Shown in pieces: positions 5,530 through 64,000 of a stretch of DNA of 64,000 nt. The stretch spans positions 248,001-312,000 of the IMG/VR virus record IMGVR_UViG_3300036715_004471; one strand, written 5' to 3'. The notes beneath the pieces are model-generated. The model was not told where the DNA came from, searched no databases, and saw only the letters and a list, made by a program, of their open reading frames with translations. Made by a program: the position numbers and the translations under genes. Position 1 is the stretch's first letter. Each line of letters begins with the position of its first letter.

Positions 5530-7377
5530 TTATTTTGGTGGCGGTCCACTTGGAGGAGGAGGTGGTGCTGAAGGAGGCTCTCCACCCAAAGGTCCGGAAG
5601 GCATTGGTGGAGGCATTCCTCCGCCTGGAGGCGCGCCCAAATCTAATCCTGGCATTCCACCTGGAGGTGGAGCTCCCATTTGTCCTGGCACAGTTCCATC
5701 TGCACCTGGTTGTGCAGGATTTTGTGATTGAGGAATTTCATCTTCATCATCCAAAGCTCTCAAAGAATTCAGATCAAGAGTGTCCAAAGACATTTGTTCT
5801 TTCTTAGCAATAGCATTTTGAATGGCTTCTTTACGTATCTTTCTAGTTTCATCTTCAAATTCTAAACCCATAGAACGATATAAAGTGTGAACTGATGCTC
5901 TTTTTTGATCGGCAGTTCCTTGTGTCAAGGTAACTAAAGTATTTATATAATCACCAGCATCAAATAATGACATATGATTCCAATCAATCTCTGGAACAAT
6001 TAATTGTTTTTCTCCATTGGAATAATCATAAAATCCTTGAATCTTAGAGATTGGGGCAAAAATCTTTCTTTTCAACCAAGTTGACATCATATTACGAAAT
6101 TGCATGTAACGCTGTCTCAAAACATCTAATGCTACACCACCGTTTGCATACGTAGTATCAGCACCACCATCCATTAAGACTGGTGGAACTTGTAATCCAA
6201 CATATATTTCTTTGATTATTTGAGTGATATCTCCAGAAATATCATATATGCCTTGACCATATCCAACTCTTTCAACTGCCACTCCTGCATGAGTAAAGAT
6301 TTTGAAATCTTTATCATATTGAGCTTCTTCGAAAATGCTTCTCCAAGCTTCTAAATCAGCAAATGTAGGATGAAGAGCATCATTTCCTTCTCCACCAATT
6401 TTTACTAAAGTTAATGGATTGATCATGTTATCTGCTTGAGCATACTTAGATTCTCTCAATTTATCGAATAACATAAGCTGTCTAAAAATACAAACAGGAA
6501 GCCCCGTGCCCCTGATTTCATAAGGGCTGATTCTTCTGGCTAAATGAGAAACATGAAAATTATCCAAAGGAATATTTTCGCCACGCTTTACAGAATCAAT
6601 AATGTGTTGATTAAGTTGTTTACGTTGTTCAATATCAGTTGATTTATTGGAAAAAATGATTTTCTTTAAATTCTCATCAGGATGTAACATGATAATTGGT
6701 TCATTAGCCACCACAGTACGTTTTACCAACATATAATCTGGGTTTTGAATCAATAATCTACTCCACTTACCCCTGCTTTCATCCAATTCAGCATAAACAA
6801 AAGATTCTCCCAAAAGCCAATACTCTTGAGCAATCTGCACGCAAATATTCATTAAATCAATTTCCTCAATCATGTCATTGAAGAATTTCTCAATATCTTT
6901 ATTGGGACATTTAATATTCAATTTGCTAATTGGATATGTACTATGAAGGTTAATAGCATTATGTACGAATGGATTCAAAGCATAAAAACTGCGACACCAA
7001 GCATTAATAGTAGCTCTATCTCTAGGAAGATTTAAGTTGCTATTAAGCCAAAGTGGAGAATATACTTCGGGAGCCTGCTTAACAGTGTCTCCATTTCCAC
7101 CACGATAACCGCCACCACTAACAATTTGAGCATATTTTTTCATGCCCACAGAAGCGGTAACAAATGAATTATGAGTTAAGTCATTTTCTTTATTAGAAGG
7201 ACCCGAACCATCTCTGAAGAAACCTTGTTCTACCTCATCTGCTAATCCGTCTCTACGTACGCTAGAAACGCCTTGAGCCATTAGAGCACTAACTTGGGGA
7301 ACAGTTGATCTTTTTTGCATAAACTGTTCTGAATTAGATGGTCCAACCCACCGTTTTGAAGATTTATTTACAGCCAT
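5530..7377 (-). CDS. portal protein (putative) with Pro/Gly-rich C-terminal tail
   Basis: 615 aa, immediately downstream of the terminase; NPFVHNAINLH, HLARRISPYEIRGT and NPLTLVKIG segments resemble large-phage portals. Confidence 0.7.
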   Translation of the reverse strand: MAVNKSSKRWVGPSNSEQFMQKRSTVPQVSALMAQGVSSVRRDGLADEVEQGFFRDGSGPSNKENDLTHNSFVTASVGMKKYAQIVSGGGYRGGNGDTVKQAPEVYSPLWLNSNLNLPRDRATINAWCRSFYALNPFVHNAINLHSTYPISKLNIKCPNKDIEKFFNDMIEEIDLMNICVQIAQEYWLLGESFVYAELDESRGKWSRLLIQNPDYMLVKRTVVANEPIIMLHPDENLKKIIFSNKSTDIEQRKQLNQHIIDSVKRGENIPLDNFHVSHLARRISPYEIRGTGLPVCIFRQLMLFDKLRESKYAQADNMINPLTLVKIGGEGNDALHPTFADLEAWRSIFEEAQYDKDFKIFTHAGVAVERVGYGQGIYDISGDITQIIKEIYVGLQVPPVLMDGGADTTYANGGVALDVLRQRYMQFRNMMSTWLKRKIFAPISKIQGFYDYSNGEKQLIVPEIDWNHMSLFDAGDYINTLVTLTQGTADQKRASVHTLYRSMGLEFEDETRKIRKEAIQNAIAKKEQMSLDTLDLNSLRALDDEDEIPQSQNPAQPGADGTVPGQMGAPPPGGMPGLDLGAPPGGGMPPPMPSGPLGGEPPSAPPPPPSGPPPK

Positions 7378-7437: not shown

Positions 7438-9318
7438 TTAAAATCTACGTCCAATATGCCCAGTGGTAATCAGTGGCTTGTTGGCTTCTTGAAACGTTTG
7501 TTGTTGAATCATTGGATTATTATTCTTGAAACCTTTAGTTAAGATAAACTTATAAGCCAAATAAGCATTTAATAAAGCCATAAATCCATCGTTTGGAGTA
7601 CCGCCTTTTACATAATGAATACTATGATCTCCATATTTAGAAATAGAAGGACTAATTTCCATACTAGCACAATGCTCGATTAACCAAGCAATTTTTTCAT
7701 AATCTCCAAAAGGAAACTTAACGTTACCCTTTTTCATTAATTCATAAAATTCACCAATATAATGATCTCTTTCAAAAACAATCTCTTTAGGAAAAGCATC
7801 AGCAGTATATTTAACGTGACCATTGACTTTATTATGAGCACGGGAAACTAGATAACGATCTCCATAAACATTATGCAACATTGAAGAAAAATCTTGAGAG
7901 AAACCAATATCTCCAACCGCCAACTGCACACTATATTGTCTCATAATTTGGTCAATTAAACCTTTCTTACTTTCCATATCATTTCTTTTGAATTTTGTTG
8001 CAAATTCAATGGATAATAAGTTTGGTCCTTTTGCTATTAATACTACGGCTGTGCTATAAGATTGACCTGTTAATTTAACTTTTTCTGGATTTGCTAACTG
8101 CTCTAAATCTGAACGAGCACCATAATCGATCCCTAAAACAACCAATTGATCTTTACTAGGTTCTATTCTGGCTCTAAATTTTCTACCGGGCTCGCCGCAC
8201 ATTTCCCTAATTTCTTCTACTGAAATTGGAGAGGCATCACCTTGATAAAATTCTCCCAATACTTCATTTTGATACACGCGTTCAGTGTTGATAGGATGTT
8301 TGCCCGGCTTTTCATTAATCAAATCTTCTCTGGTAAACATGGGCATGTAAATCTGATTGATATGAAAACCTATCATTTGACAATCTGGATCTTGTTCTGA
8401 TTTCAAAGCAATCCACTTGCCTCTTTCAGCAGCTTCGCGCTTATCTTGTTCATGACCACAATGAACACATTTAACTATGAATCCATGTATCCATATTTTT
8501 TCCCAATCATCACTTCCAGGAGTATATAATGGAAAATGATTCTCACATTTTTCACATCCTAAATAGAAGTATTGCTGAGATGATGATTGCCACATCTTGT
8601 GAAAATCAGAGCCTTTACGACGCGGCGTTCCAAAGTATACTTGTACACCTTTAGTTGGTTTACCATACTTAGCCGTAGTTAATACCTTCAAAGAGTTACC
8701 AATAGCCATACTGGTAGTCTTCTGAACTTCATCAAAAAATAACACATCAGCCGTACGACCCATGATGCGATCTCCATCCAAACCTACAGATTCTACCCAA
8801 ATATGATTTCCATTTACAAATTGTTTGAAATGCAAAGAATCATTGGTTGCACTGGTTTGATCTAATAATGATTGCATGTATGATTTAGGTCTCGCTGCTT
8901 TTTTACTTTCTTCTGGATTAGCTGGAAGAGACGAAGAAATCATTTGATTCAATTTAGTTTTAGAATAGGCGGCAGCTAATTCTAATTGAGGAAAAGCATG
9001 AATTACTCTAATTGGCGGCTTATCACCACTTCCAAAAATACCAGAGCCCATGAAGTACATTTCTAAAGCACCTGCCATGGTTGTTCCTCCAACCTGACGT
9101 CCCTTTACCATAATAACTGGTTTGGCATTTGGCTCTAAAGCTTTTATTCCAATGTATCTATAGATATCAGAAAAAGGTTTATACCCGTTGCCACTCAGAC
9201 GAAATGGTTTTCCATCTAGAGTAAGATAGTGCTCTACAAAAGCCACGGGATCAAGCATTATAAGTTGTCTTTTTAACTTTTCAAATAGTTCTTTGTCATC
9301 AATATTTAATGTCGGCAT
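7438..9318 (-). CDS. terL: terminase large subunit (lambda GpA-like)
   Basis: Walker A region VKGRQVGGTT, Walker B LFFDEVQ, CxxC pairs CEKC/CVHC between the domains, nuclease LGIDYG. Confidence 0.9.
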   Translation of the reverse strand: MPTLNIDDKELFEKLKRQLIMLDPVAFVEHYLTLDGKPFRLSGNGYKPFSDIYRYIGIKALEPNAKPVIMVKGRQVGGTTMAGALEMYFMGSGIFGSGDKPPIRVIHAFPQLELAAAYSKTKLNQMISSSLPANPEESKKAARPKSYMQSLLDQTSATNDSLHFKQFVNGNHIWVESVGLDGDRIMGRTADVLFFDEVQKTTSMAIGNSLKVLTTAKYGKPTKGVQVYFGTPRRKGSDFHKMWQSSSQQYFYLGCEKCENHFPLYTPGSDDWEKIWIHGFIVKCVHCGHEQDKREAAERGKWIALKSEQDPDCQMIGFHINQIYMPMFTREDLINEKPGKHPINTERVYQNEVLGEFYQGDASPISVEEIREMCGEPGRKFRARIEPSKDQLVVLGIDYGARSDLEQLANPEKVKLTGQSYSTAVVLIAKGPNLLSIEFATKFKRNDMESKKGLIDQIMRQYSVQLAVGDIGFSQDFSSMLHNVYGDRYLVSRAHNKVNGHVKYTADAFPKEIVFERDHYIGEFYELMKKGNVKFPFGDYEKIAWLIEHCASMEISPSISKYGDHSIHYVKGGTPNDGFMALLNAYLAYKFILTKGFKNNNPMIQQQTFQEANKPLITTGHIGRRF

Positions 9319-52935: not shown

Positions 52936-53280
52936 TTATTCTGCTTGAGAATCTTTTCTAGAGGAAGATCTTGGTTTATTTGAGTTTAATTCCATTATCT
53001 TTCTTTTCATCTCATTGCGCTTCCTTCTCCTCTTTTGAGAAGGTTTTTCATATGTCTGCCTTTCTTTATAAGCAGACAAAATTCTTTCTTTTTGCACCAA
53101 AGCCCTAAAAGCACGAAGAGCTTTGTCAAAATTGTTATTGTAAACTCTAACTTCTAATGGTTGAGCGAGAACTGCTTCGTTCTCTTTTGAATCATGGCTA
53201 ACGATTTCACCTCCTTTTTGAGCCTTTTTGAAGGTTTTTCCGCTTTTCTTAAATCCACTATCTTTTGACATAACTATCAA
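52936..53280 (-). CDS. rpsU: ribosomal protein bS21 with N- and C-terminal extensions (start 53280 or 53271)
   Basis: VRVYNNNFDKALRAF...ERQTYEKPSQKRRRKR. Confidence 0.88.
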   Translation of the reverse strand: MIVMSKDSGFKKSGKTFKKAQKGGEIVSHDSKENEAVLAQPLEVRVYNNNFDKALRAFRALVQKERILSAYKERQTYEKPSQKRRRKRNEMKRKIMELNSNKPRSSSRKDSQAE

Positions 53281-53293
53281 CTAACCTACTATT

Positions 53294-54610
53294 TCACTTG
53301 AAATACTTATCTGTGTCCACTATCTTACTGGCGTTAAGAATATTTTTATCCTTAACTAAACAACTCAAGGCACTTTCTATGTCTTTTTCTGTTGGAGCCT
53401 TACGATTATGAGCTAAAGCCTCAAACATTGCCGAAATATAAAGTTCCTTTAAGTAAGCATAAGAAAACGCTGACTTCTCTGCAAACTTAGCTAGTTCTCG
53501 ACACTTCTTAACAGACAAGAGTGCTCCGAACCATCTCTTAAGATATATATAAGCCATTTCTTGGTTTGGAAGAGGAATTTCGAATTTTCTATCAAATCTA
53601 GATGGTCTATCAGTAATATTAGATTTTAATTTCTTAACATCATTGGCTGTCGCAATAACTAACAAACCATTTTTTGCAGAAATACCATCCATCAAATTCA
53701 AAAACGAAGAAATATCTACATTCTTTTCTAACATAGAATCCAAATCCTCAAAATACAATAATGAGGGGCTTTGTTCTTCTGCATAAGAAAAGGCTTCTCT
53801 TACCGCCTCGTCATTTGCTCCAGGAACAATAGTAACTGGTTTGAAATTGTATAAAGACATAACTGTCTTTATAATAGATGTTTTACCGTTACCTGGTTTG
53901 CCATATAACAAAATACCACGCTTCCAAGGTATTTTGTTATCTATGTAAAACTGTTTAGAAGCCAAAAAATTCTCTACCAAATTCTTTAATTCATTCTTGA
54001 TACTATCAGGTAAGAATAGTCCATCCCAAGTATGATCTTTGGTATATGGCACATCTTCACCATCAACAACCCTAATATGAAGATTACTTCTATCTCTACT
54101 CTGAACCCATTTATCAAATGAATTTCTCAGAGCAACATATCCTTCATAATTTTTATTTGAACACACAACAAAGAAACTTACTTCATCTTCTTGTTGGTTT
54201 CCCTTATGAAATAAAGCGGCATGAATGAATTCTAAATTCTTATGCTTGATCAAGAAGACACCTTGAACGAAGAACTTTTCAAAATCATGCTCCGTTTGCC
54301 AAGAGATAATAGAATCTTTATACAAACATTCTACCTTGATATCGCTTTCCTCGCAAAATTTCATGAATTGACCATCAATAATAATTCTATTATGAATGTA
54401 TCTATTTATTCCTACAGTATCTTTGAGAGCAGATTTGAAATTATCCTCCACCCATTTCATTAGATCAATAAAATTAGCAGTAGGTCTCGTGTCCTCCAAC
54501 TTATTGAATAAGCCACTATCCATTAGAGCTAATAATTTCTCTTTAGATAGATGTTCTTGGCTTTCCAAATCAGAAGGGGTTAAGTAGTCTTTATTTTCTT
54601 TGACACTCAT
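53294..54610 (-). CDS. AAA+ ATPase (BCS1-like) with unknown N-terminal domain
   Basis: RGILLYGKPGNGKT, LYFEDLD, LNLMDG, DRPSRFDR. Confidence 0.88.
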   Translation of the reverse strand: MSVKENKDYLTPSDLESQEHLSKEKLLALMDSGLFNKLEDTRPTANFIDLMKWVEDNFKSALKDTVGINRYIHNRIIIDGQFMKFCEESDIKVECLYKDSIISWQTEHDFEKFFVQGVFLIKHKNLEFIHAALFHKGNQQEDEVSFFVVCSNKNYEGYVALRNSFDKWVQSRDRSNLHIRVVDGEDVPYTKDHTWDGLFLPDSIKNELKNLVENFLASKQFYIDNKIPWKRGILLYGKPGNGKTSIIKTVMSLYNFKPVTIVPGANDEAVREAFSYAEEQSPSLLYFEDLDSMLEKNVDISSFLNLMDGISAKNGLLVIATANDVKKLKSNITDRPSRFDRKFEIPLPNQEMAYIYLKRWFGALLSVKKCRELAKFAEKSAFSYAYLKELYISAMFEALAHNRKAPTEKDIESALSCLVKDKNILNASKIVDTDKYFK

Positions 54611-57283: not shown

Positions 57284-58611
57284 GTATTATCTATCATAGC
57301 GGCAGCACGATCGACAATTTTTTTACGAAGTCTATTCACATAAACCATTCCGCCCATTTGATAATGTGGGGGAATTCTTAAATGTGTTACCACTATTTCC
57401 TTACCTGGTATTATATCCTTCATCTTAAGTTTGGAAAATCCATACTCTTCAACATTATTTATAAGAGATTCTTTAGTATTTTTATCATAAACCGACAAAA
57501 GTTTGCCAATATAATATGGTTTAGTATAAGCTGCCTTACGACCACCAATATAGAATTCTTTTGTATTGTTTTTAACCTCTAACTTGTCAGAAACAATTCC
57601 ATCAAATTCGCTAATACCATCAAATAAAGATAATTCATCATCCAACAAAGATTCTATTTTGTAGATTTTACCATTCTTCTTAAAAGAATACGGTAATGAC
57701 TTCTCTAAAATGTTAATATATTCTTGGAATATTTTTTGCTGAAACCCGCCACTCCTACTGGCATGCAATAAATAATCCACCATTTCAATAGGATATTTAT
57801 CTAATAGTTCCAAAAACGCTTGATAACAACACAATTTATTATGAACAGTAAACTCAGAACTGGAGTATGCGACACTATTCATTTGAGAATTAATAACATC
57901 TTTCAACAAGATAACCTTGCCATTTAACTCTTGCAAAACTTCAATTTTATTTAAAATATCAATATCAGGATCGATAATGTTATTTTTCATGGAGGTACTA
58001 TTATCAATAGTTGCGTCTAAAATCAATTTTTCTGGATTTGATTGTATTGTTGGATGATTCATCCTTTTCAAGGATGACCAATTACCAACAAAACAACAAT
58101 CTAAATAGGGGCATGTCACTCTCATCAAATTATCTAAAGGATGAGGAATGAATCTTTCACAGTCAGCACAACGATATCCGTGTTTATTATGGCTAGCAAA
58201 TGTTTTAAACAGCGTAACCTTCTTCTGGTCAGTTGTCTGTTCTATTTTATCTTCGCAATCTTTACAATTGAAAAGCGTGCCAGATGTCAATATATTCTTA
58301 TTTTTAAAGAAAAGACACCCAGGACATAAATATTCCGTTTTCTTCTTAAAAGAAACAAATGCTCTTTTTTGACAAAAAGCATTAACAATATAAAACAAAT
58401 ATGATCCTAAATCTTGTTGCGGATCTTCTTTATTAAAAAAAGAAACACATCCGGTTTTCAATTCATCCATAACCTCAGCGATCATAGCTTGAATTGACAC
58501 CGGATTATCATTATGAAAATGTGTTCGATGAACAGTAGCAATACCTTGCTTATGTTCATCCAAAAACTGATTAACTAATGTATCAATATCTAATAAATTA
58601 TTAACTTCCAT
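57280..58611 (-). CDS. hypothetical protein with central multi-CxxC zinc domain
   Basis: CPGC, CKDC, CADC, CPYLDC; TAATG-coupled to the FtsK-like gene. Confidence 0.75.
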   Translation of the reverse strand: MEVNNLLDIDTLVNQFLDEHKQGIATVHRTHFHNDNPVSIQAMIAEVMDELKTGCVSFFNKEDPQQDLGSYLFYIVNAFCQKRAFVSFKKKTEYLCPGCLFFKNKNILTSGTLFNCKDCEDKIEQTTDQKKVTLFKTFASHNKHGYRCADCERFIPHPLDNLMRVTCPYLDCCFVGNWSSLKRMNHPTIQSNPEKLILDATIDNSTSMKNNIIDPDIDILNKIEVLQELNGKVILLKDVINSQMNSVAYSSSEFTVHNKLCCYQAFLELLDKYPIEMVDYLLHASRSGGFQQKIFQEYINILEKSLPYSFKKNGKIYKIESLLDDELSLFDGISEFDGIVSDKLEVKNNTKEFYIGGRKAAYTKPYYIGKLLSVYDKNTKESLINNVEEYGFSKLKMKDIIPGKEIVVTHLRIPPHYQMGGMVYVNRLRKKIVDRAAAMIDNT

Positions 58612-59609
58612 TATAGATTACCAAAATACTTACATACCTCAGCTGCATCAGTATATGCAATCTGAAATCTTTCTAAGGAACGAAAATTATCTCTAAGAAG
58701 AGCATCGCCTTTTCCCATAAGGTTTTCTGCTCCAACCGCGTCTAATACTACTTTACTATCTACATGACTAGCTACTCTACAAGCAATACGAGCTGGAAAA
58801 TTAGCTTTAATGGTTCCATTGATAATATTTACTGAGGGTCTTTGAGTAGCTAATATGATGTGTATCTTAGCAGCTCTGCATTTCTGCGCCAGCTTACAAA
58901 GTTTTCCATAAAATTCATTATTAGAATCTTGCACGATCAGATCTGCAAACTCATCTACAATAAGAACAATTGGTGGAAACTTTCGTTTGCTATTATCATG
59001 CATCATAGAATATCTGAATTCCATAGTCTCAATCAACATATCAAGTACATCCAAAGCTTCATGATACGAATATGATACATTAATATCATTACTTATCTTT
59101 TTATCATACTCGATAAATTCTACGCTTTTAGGATCTACTAAGAAAAGTTTCACCTTATTGTAATTGAAAAGATTAGCAATCAAATTGTGAAGCAATGTGC
59201 TTTTGCCTGAACCTGTGGTACCAGAAATAATTAAATGTGGATTTTGAGCTAAATCCATCCACATCCTCTGTCCATTCAAAGACTGCCCCAATAAGCACAT
59301 AAGATCACCACTAGGAATATCTGTATTGGTAAAATAATCAAACAAATTCAATACTTTAGTGCGAGGGGCAGCAAACTCTAACCTTACAATTCCTTCTTGG
59401 TGAAGGATTCTTACATTAGGTTTACTGGGTGAACGCAGAGCCAAAGATATCTCATCTACAAACTTGCTAATATCTTTTACTTTTGCTTGAGGCTTGAGGG
59501 TCAAATCATAAAAGAAATAATTATCTATAACCTGATAGTTAACACAACTTGCCTGAATATTGAAATTACGCAGTATTTTGTTGAAATCCTGCACATAGGT
59601 ATAGCTCAT
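58611..59609 (-). CDS. FtsK-like motor (alpha and beta domains only)
   Basis: PHLIISGTTGSGKS, IVDEFADL, ATQRPS, GAENLMGKGD; no TM or gamma domain. Confidence 0.9.
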   Translation of the reverse strand: MSYTYVQDFNKILRNFNIQASCVNYQVIDNYFFYDLTLKPQAKVKDISKFVDEISLALRSPSKPNVRILHQEGIVRLEFAAPRTKVLNLFDYFTNTDIPSGDLMCLLGQSLNGQRMWMDLAQNPHLIISGTTGSGKSTLLHNLIANLFNYNKVKLFLVDPKSVEFIEYDKKISNDINVSYSYHEALDVLDMLIETMEFRYSMMHDNSKRKFPPIVLIVDEFADLIVQDSNNEFYGKLCKLAQKCRAAKIHIILATQRPSVNIINGTIKANFPARIACRVASHVDSKVVLDAVGAENLMGKGDALLRDNFRSLERFQIAYTDAAEVCKYFGNL

Positions 59610-59662: not shown

Positions 59663-60055
59663 TTAAAATTTGTGTTGCGATAGAATTGTGCGCAATTCTC
59701 CGGAAGTTGGAGAAATTATTCCCACTTTATTGCCAATCATAATTCCAGAAGAATTTATGGTGCCATGTGGGAATTCAATTACTAAATCACTAGTATCATT
59801 TGGTCCGATGGCAGAAGTACTATATGGTTCACCCTTATGAATCGCAATGATTTTACCAGCCTTACAAAAAACAATATCTAATGGGCTTGGAGTATTTTTC
59901 ATCCAAAATTTATTGTTTTGTGGAGATGGATAAACAAATGACATGACTGGCGGTGGCCATTCTACATTCATTAACCCTTGTTGCTGTTCCTGCTGAGAAA
60001 TAGCAAAATAAGTAGGAAAAACACTATCATCGACATAAATATAACCTTTACGCAT
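59663..60055 (-). CDS. DUF192 family protein
   Basis: QQGLM...FWMKNTPSPLDIVF. Confidence 0.85.
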   Translation of the reverse strand: MRKGYIYVDDSVFPTYFAISQQEQQQGLMNVEWPPPVMSFVYPSPQNNKFWMKNTPSPLDIVFCKAGKIIAIHKGEPYSTSAIGPNDTSDLVIEFPHGTINSSGIMIGNKVGIISPTSGELRTILSQHKF

Positions 60056-61578
60056 TATCTTCTGCCTTGATAAATATCAGCCAAATCTCTGTAACGTCTT
60101 CTATCTATTAGCTGTTGAAGACGTTTACGTTGATCATCATTTAAGTTTGGTCCATAATTGGTTATCTTACCAGAATCCAAAAGATCCATGAAAGGTTGAT
60201 CAAAACCTTTTCCTCTTAAAGTTCCTTCTAATCCATTCATCAAATGAACCATTCTTTTTAACTTAAAATCTACATCTCCAGCTAATTTCATCAAATGATC
60301 AACATTCATTTCCTTTTCTAATGAATCCATCATTGTATCTATAATTTTTCTAGCAGCATCCGCCGCATTATAGATATCTAATCTGTGAGCAGAAGTTTTA
60401 TCGAGTGGACTTATCTGATGCTTTAATTTACTTATCCATCTTTGGATGGCTAATTGTCCTACAGCCTCAAGATGCTCAGCAATTACAAAACCCTTAGCTT
60501 TTTTAGCTTCAAAAATTTCCTTGAAAGATTGTCCATTAGTTCCGTTAGCTGCATTAAGTTGAGCCAATACATTAGCATATTCTGTCGTAAGAATATCTCC
60601 AGTTTGATCTCTATATGGTCCCTTTTCTACCCTATACTTACCGATCAATCTAATCAATTCTTTCATATTGATGTCGGTAAAATTAGCAGAATACTTCTTA
60701 TAATCATCTATAATACCATCTGGTCCAGATGGTGGAGGAGATGGTACAGAAGGTGCTTGAACTGGTGGAGTAGCTACAGCAGAAACCGTAGAAGCTGTGT
60801 CTGGTTTTTTTGTCTTTGGAGAAGCTGGTTTGGCTGTATCAGTAACAATGCTATCACGACCATCTTCTTTAGAAGAAATTTCGCCGCCAGATTCAGATAA
60901 TCTTTCAAAATAAGTTTCATTATAAGCTTTAATTCCAGTTTTGAAAAAATCCCAATTGCCCATAATTTTAGTTAATAATCTATTACTAGTAAAAATACTT
61001 TCTGGCGAGCTTTCAACGATATAAGATTCTAGTCTTACTAAATCTTTATAGATTTCAACCGCTGACTTTAACATAGCCATTCTATATTTTCTTGTTCTAG
61101 CGGCAGGGCTTCTACCAACACTTGGATTAAGAAGGTGGGCAAAAAATCTAGTAAAAACATTAGATCCTAATGCAACCATTTCATATACTTCTGCCTGAGC
61201 AGCCAACTGCTTACTCAAATCTGTAGGCGAAGTATCACCTGCTGGTGGAACCGAAGGCATTCGAACCAATGTTTGTTTTGGTTGTTTCTTTTTTCTACTT
61301 TTTGAATAGCTTAATTGTTCTTGAACTAACGCATTACCTTTTTGAGCAATTTCCTGAAAATCACCCGCAAGGGCACCAATGATAGTGACCGGATCACCAG
61401 GAATTGGTTCCTTAATGGATGATTTTTCAGGATAGAACTTAGAAGGTTTGCCATTCATCATATCTTTAAGACGGAATAAGTTATCAGCAAATTCTGATAC
61501 TTGCTTATTCCAGATCTTTTTATTCTGCCTCAATTTCTCTTGAACAGGATCGGATGATGGTTTAGCGGTTTTAATCAT
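60055..61578 (-). CDS. large helical hypothetical protein with Pro-rich linker
   Basis: 507 aa; starts MIKTAK like head-module proteins. Confidence 0.75.
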   Translation of the reverse strand: MIKTAKPSSDPVQEKLRQNKKIWNKQVSEFADNLFRLKDMMNGKPSKFYPEKSSIKEPIPGDPVTIIGALAGDFQEIAQKGNALVQEQLSYSKSRKKKQPKQTLVRMPSVPPAGDTSPTDLSKQLAAQAEVYEMVALGSNVFTRFFAHLLNPSVGRSPAARTRKYRMAMLKSAVEIYKDLVRLESYIVESSPESIFTSNRLLTKIMGNWDFFKTGIKAYNETYFERLSESGGEISSKEDGRDSIVTDTAKPASPKTKKPDTASTVSAVATPPVQAPSVPSPPPSGPDGIIDDYKKYSANFTDINMKELIRLIGKYRVEKGPYRDQTGDILTTEYANVLAQLNAANGTNGQSFKEIFEAKKAKGFVIAEHLEAVGQLAIQRWISKLKHQISPLDKTSAHRLDIYNAADAARKIIDTMMDSLEKEMNVDHLMKLAGDVDFKLKRMVHLMNGLEGTLRGKGFDQPFMDLLDSGKITNYGPNLNDDQRKRLQQLIDRRRYRDLADIYQGRR

Positions 61579-61607
61579 ACACTATAATGGTACATTATTG
61601 CTAACCA

Positions 61608-62330
61608 TTATAATTCTGGATAATTATCCAATAACTTCTTAATTTCTTGACATTTAACAATTGAAAATTGGTTGTTTTCTCTAACTCCAGATTCCATATC
61701 TATATAATATGGTATTTCATCTGAATTTTCTTTTTCAATCAATTTAACAATTTTGACCACATTATCTGGTTTTATTCCACCAGCAAAACCAGTAAAAATA
61801 TCTGGGTCAGGAGGCGCTACTTGTTCAATTTCTCTTCCAAACCCACCAGACGAATCATTTAACCAGGAAAGAGATATCTCTCCTGTCGCTTGCATACGCT
61901 CCAAAAAGACTTCATTAAACTTCTTTTTAGTTCCGTTTTTTTGCAAAATGATACAATAGTTGTATTTCGAAGCCACTCTCAAGATGGAATTTGATAGTTG
62001 TTTGTGATCAGTATACTTCTTAATATTCAAATTCAATTGAATACGATTTGACTTATCACACAATTCCAAAACATGTAGATCTTCTATCAAAAATCTGTCT
62101 ATAGAAGATCCACATAAATGGATAGAATGGTAAACTTTATTTTCATCTGCCCAAGATAAGAATTTCTTACAAAGATCATGACCCGGGTATCTAGTATGAG
62201 TATCATTCTTAGAATCACTGTATAGAACACTAAATTCATAAGGAACATTAGCGTCCTTAAATTCCAATAGATCCTCAAATTTTGTTTGACGGTCTACTCC
62301 AACAAATGATACTAAAACTAGATTTTTCAT
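61608..62330 (-). CDS. TrpF/PRAI-like TIM-barrel protein
   Basis: HLCG, RIQLN, DSSGGFG, FAGGIKPDNV, IDMESGVR. Confidence 0.65.
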   Translation of the reverse strand: MKNLVLVSFVGVDRQTKFEDLLEFKDANVPYEFSVLYSDSKNDTHTRYPGHDLCKKFLSWADENKVYHSIHLCGSSIDRFLIEDLHVLELCDKSNRIQLNLNIKKYTDHKQLSNSILRVASKYNYCIILQKNGTKKKFNEVFLERMQATGEISLSWLNDSSGGFGREIEQVAPPDPDIFTGFAGGIKPDNVVKIVKLIEKENSDEIPYYIDMESGVRENNQFSIVKCQEIKKLLDNYPEL

Positions 62331-62911
62331 AAAACCTCGTCAATTATTCCATATTCTAATGCTTGTTTGACATCCAACCAAACATCTCTTGTACAATCTT
62401 GTTTAATCTTTTCTAATGGGTGACCAGTGTGTTTTGCCAACATCTTCATAATATTATCATTATTGTCTTTTAAAAATTGATAATAGTTCTTTGAATTAGT
62501 CATATCATGACCGGGGATTGGGAATCCGGCTTGAATACCATGAATCATGATTTTAGAATGTTTGAAAGCACATCTTTCTCCAGGAGTGCCTGCGGCTAAA
62601 ATTACTGCTGCCGCAGAATAACATTTACCCAAACAAACTGTTCTTACAGGAGATTTAATCATTTGCATGACGTCGTAAATATTGGTTAGCCCAGCAGCAT
62701 CACCACCATTACAATGTAAGTAGATAGATATTTCTTCGTCAGAAACATTATCATAATACAACAATAAAGCGGCAAGATCAGAAGCAGACTGCTTAGTCAC
62801 ATTCTCATTCAAAAAGATAATTCTATCCTTAGATAGTTTAATATAAGTTTCTGCATATCCAGGAAACTTAGGAGGCATTGCGTGCGCATGTTCGTTAAAA
62901 TTGATTGACAT
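62327..62911 (-). CDS. clpP: ClpP peptidase, catalytic triad intact
   Basis: CLGKCYSAAA (Ser), IMIHG (His), TRDVW (Asp); AAAGG before ATG 62911. Confidence 0.92.
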   Translation of the reverse strand: MSINFNEHAHAMPPKFPGYAETYIKLSKDRIIFLNENVTKQSASDLAALLLYYDNVSDEEISIYLHCNGGDAAGLTNIYDVMQMIKSPVRTVCLGKCYSAAAVILAAGTPGERCAFKHSKIMIHGIQAGFPIPGHDMTNSKNYYQFLKDNNDNIMKMLAKHTGHPLEKIKQDCTRDVWLDVKQALEYGIIDEVL

Positions 62912-62924
62912 GAAACAATACCTT

Positions 62925-63509
62925 TCACTTATTGAAGGAAACAACTTTATCAATCAAACCATATTTGGCTGCTTGATGGCAAGTCATAAACACTCTTCTA
63001 TTAAAATCTTCTGTTACTTGTTTATAAGTCTTACCAGAAGTTTTGGCAATGATTTCCATCATTTTTTTGTTGTCTCCCATAAACTGGTCTAGAACTTTTT
63101 TGGCGTCTGTTAAATCTGAATAATTAACCCAATCGTGAGTCAATTGATTAATGGCAATTACCGAATTTTTCGTAGCAAATCTCATACCGGGAGTGCCCGC
63201 ACACAGAATGAGTGCAGCTTCATCCATCGCAGATCCAATACACACAGTTTCGATGGGTGCTTGTACTAAACACATCATGTCATAAACCATGAGGACATTT
63301 CTAATGTCACCGCCTTCTGAATTTATGAAAAGAGTTATTTTAGTATTAGGATCTTCTGCATCCTTCAAAAGCAAAGTGGCTACAATATCTGTAGCCAATT
63401 TATCATCTATCACATCACAAACAAATAATATTCTATCATTTGAAAGCTTTTGATAGATATCAATAGGGATATCCCCATGCTCCGTAGCTTCTGTTACAAG
63501 AGTATTCAA
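62925..63509 (-). CDS. ClpP-like subunit lacking the catalytic triad (ClpR-like)
   Basis: CIGSAMDEAA (Ser to Asp), IAINQ (His to Asn), NRRVF (Asp to Arg); INSEGG retained; TTG start. Confidence 0.88.
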   Translation of the reverse strand: MNTLVTEATEHGDIPIDIYQKLSNDRILFVCDVIDDKLATDIVATLLLKDAEDPNTKITLFINSEGGDIRNVLMVYDMMCLVQAPIETVCIGSAMDEAALILCAGTPGMRFATKNSVIAINQLTHDWVNYSDLTDAKKVLDQFMGDNKKMMEIIAKTSGKTYKQVTEDFNRRVFMTCHQAAKYGLIDKVVSFNK

Positions 63510-63511
63510 AA

Positions 63512-63865
63512 TTAAGCTCTCTTTCTTTGTTTTACTTCGGCTTCTCTTTCTTCAGCACACAAAACGCAGGTTTCAAAACAAGGATTTGTTAATAACCTTT
63601 TTTCAGGGATATCATCATCACAATCCTCGCACAAACCATAAGTATTACTTTCAATCTTCCTTAGAGCATTGTTTATTAATGCAACTTTAGCCAAGTCTCT
63701 TGACGATAATTGATTGGCTATTTCAATCAGCAAATTGCCCTGAACCTCATCGGTTTCGTCGCCATCAGTGTCTATATCTGGCAGTTGATTTGCTTTAATT
63801 AATAACTCATTCTTTTGATTTTGTAAATCGTTTTTTATTTGTTGCAAGAAATCTTTATTTTTCAT
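63512..63865 (-). CDS. dksA: DksA/TraR C4 zinc-finger RNAP-binding protein
   Basis: Coiled coil with DETDEV tip; ALRKIESNTYGLCEDC...RL..NP...CVLC. Confidence 0.88.
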   Translation of the reverse strand: MKNKDFLQQIKNDLQNQKNELLIKANQLPDIDTDGDETDEVQGNLLIEIANQLSSRDLAKVALINNALRKIESNTYGLCEDCDDDIPEKRLLTNPCFETCVLCAEEREAEVKQRKRA

Positions 63866-63998
63866 CTTTAATAAACCTCAAATCACTAATGGGTGCTGTA
63901 ATTGTTCCTTTGGGAAAAGGGACTTTTTTATCGTCTGTCCTTTTAATAAAAATCAAATATGCATGGTTGACTGGTTCTTCTAACTTGAAGGCATTAAC
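63855..63998 (-). CDS. 3' end of a gene entering from the right edge
   Basis: Open frame ...VNAFKLEEPVNHAYLIF...RFIKDEK* overlapping the dksA start. Confidence 0.55.
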   Translation of the reverse strand, partial: VNAFKLEEPVNHAYLIFIKRTDDKKVPFPKGTITAPISDLRFIKDEK

Positions 63999-64000
63999 TA

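What the first reader, a model, noticed from the sequence alone, without database searches (positions are those of the whole stretch)
62327..63509. Phage-encoded ClpP plus triad-dead ClpR-like pair
Seen: adjacent paralogs, one with Ser/His/Asp intact and the other with all three replaced (Asp/Asn/Arg) yet full-length and undisrupted. No ClpX/ClpA in the window. Known: inactive ClpR subunits form mixed cores in cyanobacteria, plastids and apicoplasts and affect assembly and ATPase pairing. Inference: a phage ClpPR core, or a dead subunit that poisons or redirects host ClpP. I know of no described phage example, but could not search.
Basis: partly seen in the sequence, partly recalled or inferred. 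Interest (0 to 1): 0.75.

Follow-up and report, generated by a model that had tools for sequence, protein, structure and literature searches.

The report
Huge-phage ClpP with dead partner
A 446-kb environmental phage, and a whole lineage of its relatives, carries two adjacent copies of the ClpP protease gene, one catalytically dead but strongly conserved. The pair arose by duplication inside the phage lineage and most likely builds a two-part protease barrel, which has not been described for a virus.

Summary
On the minus strand, 62925-63509 encodes a full-length ClpP homolog with Asp/Asn/Arg at the Ser/His/Asp positions. The next gene, 62327-62911, encodes a ClpP with an intact triad.

The window lies in a 446.5-kb tailed-phage genome from aquatic, mat and sediment metagenomes.

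- **Conserved, not decaying.** All 38 related loci have the dead gene directly upstream of the active one. So do the two most divergent relatives with enough downstream sequence. The dead copy never keeps a triad residue; the active copy always does. dN/dS is about 0.1-0.15 for both.
- **Not copied from a host operon.** In a careful tree the two families are sisters. They nest among single-copy active ClpPs from phage-like contigs with the same gene order, so this was a tandem duplication inside phages.
- **The copies split the ancestral features.** The dead one kept the canonical N-terminal axial hairpin, which faces the ATPase. The active one kept catalysis and lost the hairpin.
- **Rates co-vary.** Their evolutionary rates track each other more tightly than any other neighbouring gene pair.
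- **No partner found.** None of the four complete genomes tested encodes ClpX, and this genome has no Clp/Hsp100-type ATPase.

Best reading: a heteromeric phage ClpP core with divided labour, served by a host unfoldase. Co-assembly, architecture and partner remain inferred. It resembles ClpR in function but is not a ClpR family member.

The parts
62925..63509 (-). Triad-dead ClpP paralog, 194 aa, TTG start 2 nt after the upstream gene's stop. D96, N121 and R172 replace Ser, His and Asp. It keeps the canonical ClpP N-terminal hairpin.
   Evidence: Pfam PF00574 E 1.9e-46. Alignments to E. coli ClpP and to PDB ClpPs. Codons checked. Dead state kept in 120 of 120 close homologs and in about 35 clusters at 50% identity. 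N-terminal conservation.
62327..62911 (-). Catalytically intact ClpP paralog, 194 aa from ATG 62911 (the mechanical ORF runs to TTG 62953). It has S99, H124 and D176. The N-terminal hairpin is replaced by a variable, somewhat His-enriched extension.
   Evidence: Pfam PF00574 E 1.6e-47. Alignment. Triad S-H-D/E in 39 of 39 gene copies: the window plus 38 loci. Start choice. N-terminal variability.
62912..62924 (-). 13-nt spacer between the dead gene's TGA and the active gene's ATG, containing AAGG (a likely ribosome-binding site). In relatives the two genes are mostly between 14 nt overlapping and 13 nt apart.
   Evidence: Sequence. Distribution of gaps in 38 loci. No promoter or terminator signal above shuffled expectation.
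63512..63865 (-). DksA/TraR-type C4 zinc-finger protein. It lies directly upstream of the ClpP gene or genes in every relative examined, including single-copy lineages.
   Evidence: Pfam and NCBIfam. Synteny.
60055..61578 (-). Fast-evolving protein of unknown function (507 aa here, 498-899 aa in relatives) with a Pro/Ser/Thr-rich linker. It follows the ClpP gene or genes in relatives.
   Evidence: No hit in Pfam, NCBIfam or PHROGs. No usable Atlas hit. Synteny. Largest mean distance of the six block proteins.
61608..62330 (-). Variable insert between the active ClpP and the unknown protein, with a weak PRAI-like match below the Pfam cut-off. Present only in the nearest relatives; not part of the conserved module.
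   Evidence: Pfam E 9e-4, under the cut-off. Found in L020-L023 and L031 only, in two frames in L021-L023 and L031. Absent in L015 and L016.
59663..60055 (-). DUF192 protein, a conserved member of the same gene block.
   Evidence: Pfam E 3e-18. Synteny.
58611..59609 (-). FtsK/SpoIIIE-like P-loop ATPase, a conserved member of the block. It is a DNA-translocase type, not an unfoldase.
   Evidence: Pfam E 2e-31. PHROG 1358 E 3.5e-66.
53294..54610 (-). Classic-clade AAA ATPase (438 aa, one AAA module after a 230-aa N-domain), 7.7 kb downstream of the pair. It is the only candidate phage-encoded unfoldase near the pair, and a poor one: by eye there is no aromatic pore loop between Walker A and B, and no IGF-type loop.
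   Evidence: Pfam AAA E 7e-19. NCBIfam PAN/Cdc48/FtsH-like hits far below cut-offs. 57-76% identical orthologs in 11 of 12 relatives; in the two relatives checked (G001, G003) they lie 7-9 kb downstream of the pair. Sequence.

Best explanation
The two genes encode the two subunit types of a phage-made heteromeric ClpP barrel.

**Shown: origin.** An ancestral single phage ClpP sat in a conserved block (DksA-like, ClpP, unknown protein, DUF192, FtsK-like). It had both the catalytic triad and the canonical N-terminal axial hairpin. It duplicated in tandem within one lineage of roughly 330-470-kb phages.

**Shown: division of features.** The upstream copy lost all three catalytic residues. It kept the hairpin, a conserved Thr/Ser-Phe/Tyr-Met/Leu set at the three aromatic hydrophobic-patch positions, and the acidic-Arg pair next to the former catalytic Asp. 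The downstream copy kept Ser-His-Asp(Glu) and lost the hairpin.

**Inferred: mechanism.** The dead subunits provide the gated pore and the docking face for an AAA+ unfoldase. The active subunits provide all peptide-bond cleavage. The arrangement I favour is a dead heptamer stacked on an active heptamer, which would give a one-sided protease.

**Inferred: partner.** The genome encodes no Clp-type unfoldase, so the partner is most likely the host's ClpX, ClpA or ClpC. During infection the phage would then divert host unfoldases onto a chamber of its own.

**Not shown.** Co-assembly, ring arrangement, the partner ATPase and the substrates.
For: **Fold and residues**
- Both genes are full-length ClpPs; the triad is dead in one and intact in the other.
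- The dead state is ancient and maintained. 120 of 120 close homologs lack the triad. About 35 clusters at 50% identity show variable residues at the three positions on a conserved scaffold.

**Pairing**
- In 38 of 38 related loci the dead gene lies directly upstream of an S-H-D/E gene, mostly between 14 nt overlapping and 13 nt apart.
- The pairing holds in the most divergent relatives, at 32-40% identity.

**Selection**
- dN/dS has a median of 0.11 for the dead copy and 0.15 for the active one. In most of the nine pairs the dead copy's dN does not exceed the active copy's.

**Origin**
- In the careful tree DEAD has support 100/100 and ACT 100/99. They are sisters at 97/85, inside a 99/97 clade with ClpPs that carry S-H-D/E.
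- Two of those (P0177, P0231) were checked and occupy the same gene order as single copies.

**Divided features**
- At least seven of the twelve outgroup ClpPs (P0231, P0161, P0178, P0223, P0190, P0221, P0256) share the canonical hairpin with the dead family: E8, T10, G13 and D18 in E. coli numbering. The active family lacks it.
- Mean top-residue frequency over the N-terminus is 0.65 in the dead family and 0.34 in the active family. The rest of each protein scores 0.67-0.69.

**Co-variation and docking**
- DEAD-ACT has the highest raw r (0.85) and partial r (0.69) of 15 pairs among six syntenic proteins. None of 5000 permutations reached it.
- Complex prediction: score 0.32 against 0.00 for the best control, 'weak support'. 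That mark was reached by 58 of 80 solved complexes and 2 of 110 mismatched pairs.

**Precedents**
- In Streptomyces ClpP1P2, ClpP1 supplies the activity, ClpP2 binds all the ATPases, and a ClpP2 Ser-to-Ala mutant keeps full activity (PMC9765437).
Against: - Nothing physical shows that the two proteins bind. The complex score is weak, and the tool warns that it may reflect memory of solved ClpP rings.
- Rate co-variation could arise because paralogs share constraints without touching.
- Hydrophobic-patch positions stay hydrophobic in both families, so sequence does not say which face docks an ATPase.
- No partner unfoldase was identified and the host is unknown.
- No RNA evidence was obtained.
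- Neither the prohead protease nor the major capsid protein was located, so a structural role is not excluded.
- Stacked rings versus mixed rings could not be told apart.
Confidence: 0.6

Rival explanations
1. Decoy or poison. The dead subunit acts on the host rather than on its phage partner. It either mixes into host ClpP rings or caps and sequesters host ClpX/ClpA/ClpC through its intact hairpin, damping host Clp proteolysis. The active paralog works separately.
For: The dead copy keeps exactly the ATPase-facing features. No phage Clp unfoldase exists, so host unfoldases are the obvious contact. Iyer et al. proposed that jumbo-phage ClpP and ClpS are aimed at the host (PMC7824862).
Against: The dead gene was never seen without the active one directly downstream, wherever downstream sequence was available. 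The two co-vary in rate more than any other neighbouring pair. The dead copy is only about 32-39% identical to cellular-type ClpPs, which makes mixed rings with host ClpP unlikely.
Confidence: 0.13
2. Head-maturation protease. The pair, or the active copy alone, is the phage's prohead protease. Many phage prohead proteases are ClpP-related, and the unknown helical protein downstream would then be a scaffold.
For: The best PHROG hits are families annotated 'head maturation protease' (phrog_94, E 1.5e-24 and 3.4e-11). No S77, S78 or other prohead protease was found in the genome or next to the portal. The protein downstream is fast-evolving with a low-complexity linker, which is scaffold-like.
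Against: Matches to true ClpP are much stronger: 153-167 bits on NF001368 and E 1e-47 on Pfam. The ClpP-related head-maturation model NF045542 gives only 55 and 49 bits against a cut-off of 120. The dead family and at least seven of the twelve outgroup ClpPs keep the axial hairpin, which matters for a gated, ATPase-served barrel. Neighbours are DksA-like, HU, FtsK-like, topoisomerase and S21 rather than capsid genes. Terminase and portal lie 53-57 kb away.
Confidence: 0.1
3. Two independent homo-oligomers. The dead protein has taken on a non-proteolytic job of its own, such as a chaperone-like cage or a regulator, and merely stays next to its paralog.
For: Catalytically dead ClpR forms homoheptamers on its own in Plasmodium (PMC7966870). 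Nothing here shows physical contact.
Against: Invariant adjacency and frequent start/stop overlap. The complementary loss of hairpin in one copy and triad in the other is what division of labour within one complex predicts. The strongest rate co-variation of the block.
Confidence: 0.1
4. Recent capture of a host clpP-clpR (or clpP1-clpP2) operon, or a decaying duplicate.
For: Adjacent clpP paralogs are common in bacteria (my knowledge).
Against: Both copies score far below NCBIfam ClpP cut-offs: 153 and 167 bits against 249. Both are about 32% identical to E. coli ClpP. No relative of the dead family was found in 185,579 species genomes at the sensitivity of the pattern search. The two are sisters inside a phage clade. 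dN/dS is 0.1-0.15 and no frame is disrupted in any of 38 loci.
Confidence: 0.02

Closest known systems
Asymmetric ClpP1P2 heterotetradecamers of Actinobacteria (Streptomyces, M. tuberculosis) and Listeria
   Same: Two ClpP paralogs, usually encoded side by side. One ring type binds all the unfoldases and the other does most or all of the cleavage. In Streptomyces the docking subunit's own serine is dispensable (PMC9765437; PMC4416901). The first hydrophobic-patch position is Ser in Streptomyces ClpP2 and Thr/Ser in 30 of 31 dead-family members.
   Different: In the Streptomyces and M. tuberculosis systems both subunits keep a Ser-His-Asp triad; Listeria ClpP1 has Asn in place of Asp. Here the presumed docking subunit has lost all three residues, and the catalytic subunit has lost its N-terminal hairpin. 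The pair is phage-encoded and arose by its own duplication. The stacked-ring architecture is not shown here.
ClpR subunits of cyanobacteria, plastids and apicoplasts (ClpP3/R, ClpPR cores)
   Same: A ClpP homolog without a catalytic triad that is kept as a core subunit beside active ClpP (PMC7966870).
   Different: Independent origin. The dead family is sister to its own phage partner. It scores 100 bits against a cut-off of 263 on NF009204, which one of 14 control genomes passes and which I take, from memory, to be the cyanobacterial ClpR-type model. By my reading it has no insertion relative to E. coli ClpP near the active-site region. There is no ClpC/ClpS/ClpT context.
Single ClpP genes of jumbo and mega phages (phage G ClpXP, Atu_ph07, Lak-like megaphages)
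   Same: Phage-encoded true ClpP. Iyer et al. suggested it is aimed at host proteins (PMC7824862). Phage G has ClpP plus ClpX (PMC12484599).
   Different: Those examined here are all catalytically intact and scattered in the genome. The main copies are 37-56% identical to E. coli ClpP, and phage G brings its own ClpX. None is a dead/active tandem pair.
ClpP-related phage head-maturation proteases (NF045542, PHROG 94)
   Same: Same fold superfamily. The best PHROG label for both proteins.
   Different: Both are below the NCBIfam cut-off (55 and 49 bits against 120). Both match ClpP at full length including the handle, and the dead copy matches the hairpin too. They are not located among head genes.

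Membership tests
ClpP / CLP_protease (Pfam PF00574, MEROPS S14) | Full-length match to the ClpP fold profile | tested here: met
   Both proteins: E about 1e-47 over roughly 175 of 182 profile positions. PDB ClpPs match at E down to 7e-34.
ClpP / CLP_protease (Pfam PF00574, MEROPS S14) | Ser-His-Asp catalytic triad | tested here: not met
   Met by the downstream protein (S99, H124, D176). Not met by the upstream one (D96, N121, R172). The upstream protein is therefore a ClpP-fold pseudoenzyme.
ClpP equivalogs of NCBIfam (TIGR00493, NF001368) | Score above the curated cut-off | tested here: not met
   128-138 bits against 308.6 on TIGR00493, and 153-167 bits against 249 on NF001368. Both are divergent, not host-like.
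ClpR (cyanobacteria, plastids, apicoplasts) | ClpP homolog lacking the catalytic triad | tested here: met
   Definition from PMC7966870.
ClpR (cyanobacteria, plastids, apicoplasts) | Common descent with cyanobacterial ClpR | tested here: not met
   NF009204 gives 100 bits against a cut-off of 263; that this model is ClpR-type is my recollection. The tree places the dead family as sister of its phage partner inside a phage ClpP clade. No named ClpR sequence could be put in the tree.
ClpR (cyanobacteria, plastids, apicoplasts) | Co-assembles with active ClpP in one core | tested here: inconclusive
   Complex prediction gave weak support, 0.32 against 0.00 for the best control. Indirect support comes from adjacency and rate co-variation.
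Asymmetric ClpP1P2 heterotetradecamer | Two distinct ClpP paralogs encoded together | tested here: met
   Adjacent in 38 of 38 loci.
Asymmetric ClpP1P2 heterotetradecamer | One homoheptameric ring of each type, with unfoldases docking on one face only | not testable with these tools
   Only suggested: the N-terminal hairpin is kept in one paralog alone.
ClpP-related head-maturation protease (NF045542) | Score above the curated cut-off | tested here: not met
   55.4 and 49.5 bits against 120.
ClpP-related head-maturation protease (NF045542) | Encoded among portal, scaffold and capsid genes | tested here: not met
   Portal is at 5530-7377 and terminase at 7438-9318, 53-57 kb away. Neighbours are DksA-like, DUF192, FtsK-like and topoisomerase. 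The capsid gene itself was not located.

The most novel reading that the evidence does not exclude
A widespread lineage of huge phages has independently invented a 'ClpR'. A catalytically dead ring does only gating and docking, stacked on a hairpin-less catalytic ring. The phage uses this one-sided barrel to capture the host's own ClpX/ClpA/ClpC unfoldases, pulling host-controlled proteolysis into a phage-controlled chamber during infection. That could serve takeover or counter-defence, for example by changing which proteins are destroyed.
Probability: 0.3. Interest if true: 0.8.

Novelty: new variant of a known kind. Interest (0 to 1): 0.68.

Why it matters
- **A second, independent origin.** Dead ClpP subunits were known only from cyanobacteria and their organelle descendants, and why they are kept is still debated. 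Here the ancestral single-copy state survives in sister lineages. That gives a clean natural experiment in duplication followed by complementary loss: triad in one copy, axial hairpin in the other.
- **A natural end-point of a known design.** It is the extreme of the division of labour shown by mutagenesis in Streptomyces ClpP1P2.
- **A testable idea for phage biology.** The largest phages may not just borrow host proteolysis but re-plumb it with their own barrel.
- **Small and tractable.** Both proteins are 194 aa and soluble-type. That makes the questions of ring arrangement, unfoldase choice and gating directly testable.

Tried and rejected
- **Close phage relatives in GenBank phages.** No DNA match. 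Protein hits were at most 39% identical. The terminase is only 24% identical to the nearest record.
- **Dead family in cellular genomes.** Alignment A2 gave no usable pattern. Patterns from A4 found no relative in 185,579 species genomes; this is limited to the sensitivity of a pattern search.
- **Host identification.** The S21 scan found nothing. The window has no tRNA. The host remains unknown.
- **Phage Clp unfoldase or adaptor.**
  - PF10431 gave no hit in this genome.
  - The PF07724 hit is a MoxR-like ATPase.
  - ClpS scored only E 0.04.
  - The ClpX model found nothing in four complete genomes of the lineage.
  - One of 24 relatives (G002) has a 748-aa Hsp100, but by eye it lacks an IGF/IGL/VGF loop and so looks ClpB-like.
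- **Three classic AAA ATPases of the genome**. The one in the window is well conserved in the lineage. It lacks an aromatic pore loop by eye and resembles the BCS1-like proteins noted in jumbo phages (PMC7824862). I do not count it as a likely ClpP partner.
- **Prohead protease and capsid.** Searches with S77, S78, NF045542 and PF05065 found nothing, and scans of genes beside the portal found nothing either.
- **Expression.** The only 'RNA' run offered is probably DNA and gave one 254-nt piece. This is no evidence either way.
- **Complex prediction.** Weak support only: 0.32 against 0.00 for the best control. That mark was reached by 58 of 80 solved complexes and 2 of 110 mismatches, but passes at or below 0.60 are more often wrong than right unless the guess was already likely. 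The interface it drew is the ordinary side-by-side ring contact, which the model would draw for any two ClpPs, so it says nothing about mixed versus stacked rings.
- **Unknown protein downstream.** The Atlas search gave nothing.
- **Lak-like megaphages with several ClpPs.** All copies are catalytically intact and not adjacent.
- **First dN/dS script.** It timed out and was redone.
- **First alignment for locus search.** Too divergent and was replaced by A2.
Full report
**1. What is there**

On the minus strand, 62925-63509 and 62327-62953 are open frames of 194 and 208 aa. Both match Pfam CLP_protease over nearly the whole profile, at E 1.9e-46 and 1.6e-47. They are 35% identical to each other.

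I fetched E. coli clpP from NC_000913.3 and aligned all three. The search against solved structures gave the same register.
- The upstream protein has Asp96, Asn121 and Arg172 where ClpP has Ser, His and Asp.
- The downstream protein has Ser99, His124 and Asp176.
- All six codons were verified.

The downstream gene most likely starts at ATG 62911, giving 194 aa. That start follows a 13-nt spacer with AAGG after the upstream TGA. Orthologs are 182-208 aa, mostly 193-199.

**2. Context**

The window is bases 248,001-312,000 of a 446,541-bp IMG/VR virus record.
- The window itself holds a large terminase, a portal, a DNA polymerase, a UvsX-like recombinase and SbcCD.
- It also holds a type-IA topoisomerase, ribosomal protein S21 and an MT-A70 methylase.
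- The genome has 56 tRNA genes, all on one strand.
- The terminase is only 24% identical to the nearest GenBank phage.
- The DNA is found in microbial-mat, aquatic, sediment, lake, groundwater and wastewater metagenomes.

This is an uncultured huge tailed phage with an unknown host.

**3. The dead copy is maintained, and always paired**

- The word-index search gave 731 proteins at E <= 1e-10. All 120 listed (68-100% identical) lack the triad.
- The exhaustive search of 50%-identity representatives showed about 35 further clusters of the same family, down to 32% identity. Almost any residue occurs at the three positions, while the scaffold stays conserved.
- A profile scan of IMG/VR returned 36 loci on contigs up to 473 kb.
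- In those 36 loci, plus two from other collections, the dead gene is always followed directly by a gene with Ser-His-Asp or Ser-His-Glu. Most junctions fall between a 14-nt overlap and a 13-nt gap.
- The most divergent family members examined show the same order, wherever downstream sequence was available.
- dS is near saturation. Even so, dN/dS has a median of 0.11 for the dead gene and 0.15 for the active one, and the dead copy changes no faster.

Random decay is excluded.

**4. Origin**

A quick tree of 147 rows and a careful tree of 60 rows under LG+C20+F+G4 agree.
- The dead family is monophyletic at 100/100 and the active family at 100/99.
- In the careful tree they are sisters at 97/85.
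- Together they sit in a 99/97 clade with a set of S-H-D/E ClpPs, apart from the representatives that group with E. coli ClpP.

I looked up two of those outgroup ClpPs. Each is the single ClpP in the same gene order: DksA/TraR-like, ClpP, an unknown protein of about 500 aa, then DUF192. On the longer contig the order also includes HU upstream and FtsK-like plus topoisomerase downstream.

The pair therefore arose by tandem duplication of a phage ClpP, not by capture of a host clpP-clpR operon. Three further results agree.
- Both proteins score far under NCBIfam's ClpP cut-offs.
- Both are about 32% identical to E. coli ClpP.
- No relative of the dead family was found in 185,579 species genomes at pattern-search sensitivity.

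Caveats: the background representatives are unnamed, and single-copy status was verified for only two of them.

**5. Complementary loss**

At least seven of the twelve outgroup ClpPs have both the triad and the canonical N-terminal hairpin. Single-copy status was checked for one of these, P0231; the other verified single copy, P0177, has a non-canonical N-terminus.
- The dead family keeps the hairpin. In E. coli mature numbering it has E8 in 29 of 31 members, T10 in 26, G13 in 27 and D18 in 30. Its first 20 residues are as conserved as the rest of the protein, 0.65 against 0.67.
- The active family has a variable, somewhat His-enriched extension there instead, 0.34 against 0.69.

The three aromatic patch residues known to matter for unfoldase binding are Y74, Y76 and F96 of the E. 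coli precursor (PMC9765437).
- In the dead family they are Thr/Ser (30 of 31), Phe/Tyr (28 of 31) and Met/Leu (28 of 31).
- In the active family the first position is unconstrained.
- Streptomyces ClpP2, the ATPase-binding subunit there, also has Ser at the first position.

The acidic-Arg pair before the catalytic Asp is kept in the dead family: E/D in 25 of 31 and R in 27 of 31. It is mostly Lys-Arg in the active family. From memory, this pair is an inter-ring sensor in S. aureus ClpP. This would fit a dead-on-active ring contact, but I did not test it.

**6. Do they assemble together?**

Three lines of indirect support.
- **Adjacency and overlap.** These are invariant.
- **Rate co-variation.** Among six proteins of the conserved block across 27 loci, the dead-active pair has the highest raw distance correlation (0.85). 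It also has the highest partial correlation after removing the shared background (0.69, next best 0.47). None of 5000 permutations reached it.
- **Complex prediction.** It scored 0.32 against 0.00 for the best control. That mark was reached by 58 of 80 solved complexes and 2 of 110 mismatches, but a pass this low is weak.

The predicted interface is the usual side-by-side ring contact. It cannot separate stacked from mixed rings, and it may be recalled from solved ClpPs. Co-assembly is therefore probable but not shown.

**7. Partner ATPase**

- The genome has no ClpB_D2-small domain, no ClpX and no credible ClpS. The one AAA_2 hit is MoxR-like.
- Three other complete genomes of the lineage also lack ClpX.
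- Among 24 related records, only G002 has an Hsp100. It has no IGF-type loop by eye.
- The genome encodes three classic-clade AAA proteins.
- The one in the window (53294-54610) is 57-76% identical in 11 of 12 relatives. In the two relatives checked it lies 7-9 kb downstream of the pair.
- It lacks an aromatic pore loop and looks like the BCS1-type proteins described in jumbo phages (PMC7824862).

A host unfoldase is the most economical partner. That is an inference.

**8. Rivals**

- **Head-maturation protease.** PHROGs labels both proteins 'head maturation protease', and I could not find another prohead protease or the capsid gene. Against this, the match to true ClpP is much stronger than to the ClpP-related head-protease model, which gives 55 and 49 bits against a cut-off of 120. 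The hairpin is conserved, and the neighbours are not head genes.
- **Decoy or poison of host Clp.** This fits the retained ATPase-facing features. It does not fit the obligatory pairing or the co-variation.
- **Independent homo-oligomers.** Possible, as for Plasmodium ClpR in vitro (PMC7966870).
- **Recent host capture or decay.** Contradicted (sections 3 and 4).

**9. Comparison with known systems**

- **Asymmetric ClpP1P2 cores.** This is the closest functional match. In Streptomyces, ClpP1 cleaves, ClpP2 binds ClpX, ClpC1 and ClpC2, and a ClpP2 Ser-to-Ala mutant is fully active (PMC9765437). In M. tuberculosis the chaperones bind only the ClpP2 face (PMC4416901). The phage pair looks like the natural end-point of that design.
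- **ClpR.** By definition the dead subunit is ClpR-like, a ClpP homolog without a triad (PMC7966870). It is not a ClpR family member by descent.
- **Other phage ClpPs.** ClpP genes in jumbo phages are known (PMC7824862; phage G ClpXP, PMC12484599; Jug phages list CLP_protease among their most frequent domains, PMC12880540).
- **Literature.** Four of the five full-text searches were aimed at a phage-encoded triad-dead ClpP or a phage ClpP/ClpR pair, and none found a description. The library holds open-access papers only, so this is absence of evidence.

**10. Verdict**

The feature is real, conserved and phage-born: a new variant of a known kind of machine. Confidence:
- about 0.9 that it is a selected dead/active pair made by duplication within phages;
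- about 0.6 that it forms a heteromeric core with divided labour;
- lower for the stacked-ring, host-unfoldase-capture model.

Noticed in passing
window 52936-53280 (-): Phage-encoded ribosomal protein S21 (Pfam E 8e-16), directly downstream of the conserved AAA ATPase. Used for a host search that found nothing.
   Followed up: partly
window 53294-54610 (-): A 438-aa classic-clade AAA ATPase with a 230-aa N-domain of unknown type. It is more conserved across the lineage (57-76% identity in 11 of 12 relatives) than the ClpPs themselves. The one relative that lacks it (G002) is the one that has a ClpB-like Hsp100.
   Followed up: partly
L080 1468-3243 (-) = G002:C1 around 354,000: A relative of 472,749 bp encodes a 748-aa two-module Hsp100 (ClpB_D2-small, E 2.9e-24) with no IGF/IGL/VGF loop by eye. 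It was the only Clp/Hsp100 found among 24 related records.
   Followed up: partly
window 60055-61578 (-): A fast-evolving protein of unknown function with a Pro/Ser/Thr-rich linker (498-899 aa in relatives). It follows the ClpP gene or genes, directly in most relatives but after one inserted gene here and in L082, and in single-copy lineages too. No family, feature or fold match was found.
   Followed up: partly
window 63512-63865 (-): A DksA/TraR-type zinc-finger protein always lies directly upstream of the ClpP gene or genes, 2 nt from the dead gene's start here. Whether it is functionally tied to the protease is unknown.
   Followed up: no
window 61608-62330 (-): A 240-aa gene with a weak PRAI-like match is inserted between the active ClpP and the unknown protein, only in the nearest relatives. 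In L021-L023 and L031 the match is split over two frames, so it may be degenerating there.
   Followed up: partly
G000:C1 15230-15303 and 320811-320884 (outside the window): Two tRNAs with a CUA anticodon (amber-suppressor type) are among the genome's 56 tRNAs. TAG ends only 15 of 329 long minus-strand frames. Partial TAG recoding is possible. The two ClpP genes end in TGA and are open under table 11, so they would be unaffected.
   Followed up: partly
P0161, P0231, P0256, P0180, P0190, P0221 (the outgroup ClpPs; single-copy status verified only for P0231): These outgroup ClpPs carry a Lys-rich C-terminal tail of about 10-25 aa that both members of the duplicated pair lack.
   Followed up: no
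window 62858-62911 (-), N-terminus of the active ClpP: The hairpin-less N-terminal extension of the active family has twice the His content of the rest of the protein (8% against 3.7%), often as alternating His with Asp or Glu. It could be a propeptide or a metal-binding tail.
   Followed up: partly
run X1, laid on window 60000-64000: The sample that holds this genome at 100% identity also holds a second, diverged relative of the same locus (a 6-kb contig at about 80% identity). Related huge phages therefore co-occur in one mat sample.
   Followed up: no
G000, G003, G004, G005, G009, G024 (whole records): IMG/VR classes this genome and several relatives as 'provirus', while a close relative of 451,956 bp has direct terminal repeats. 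No terminal repeat was found in G000. Whether any of these phages integrates was not examined.
   Followed up: no
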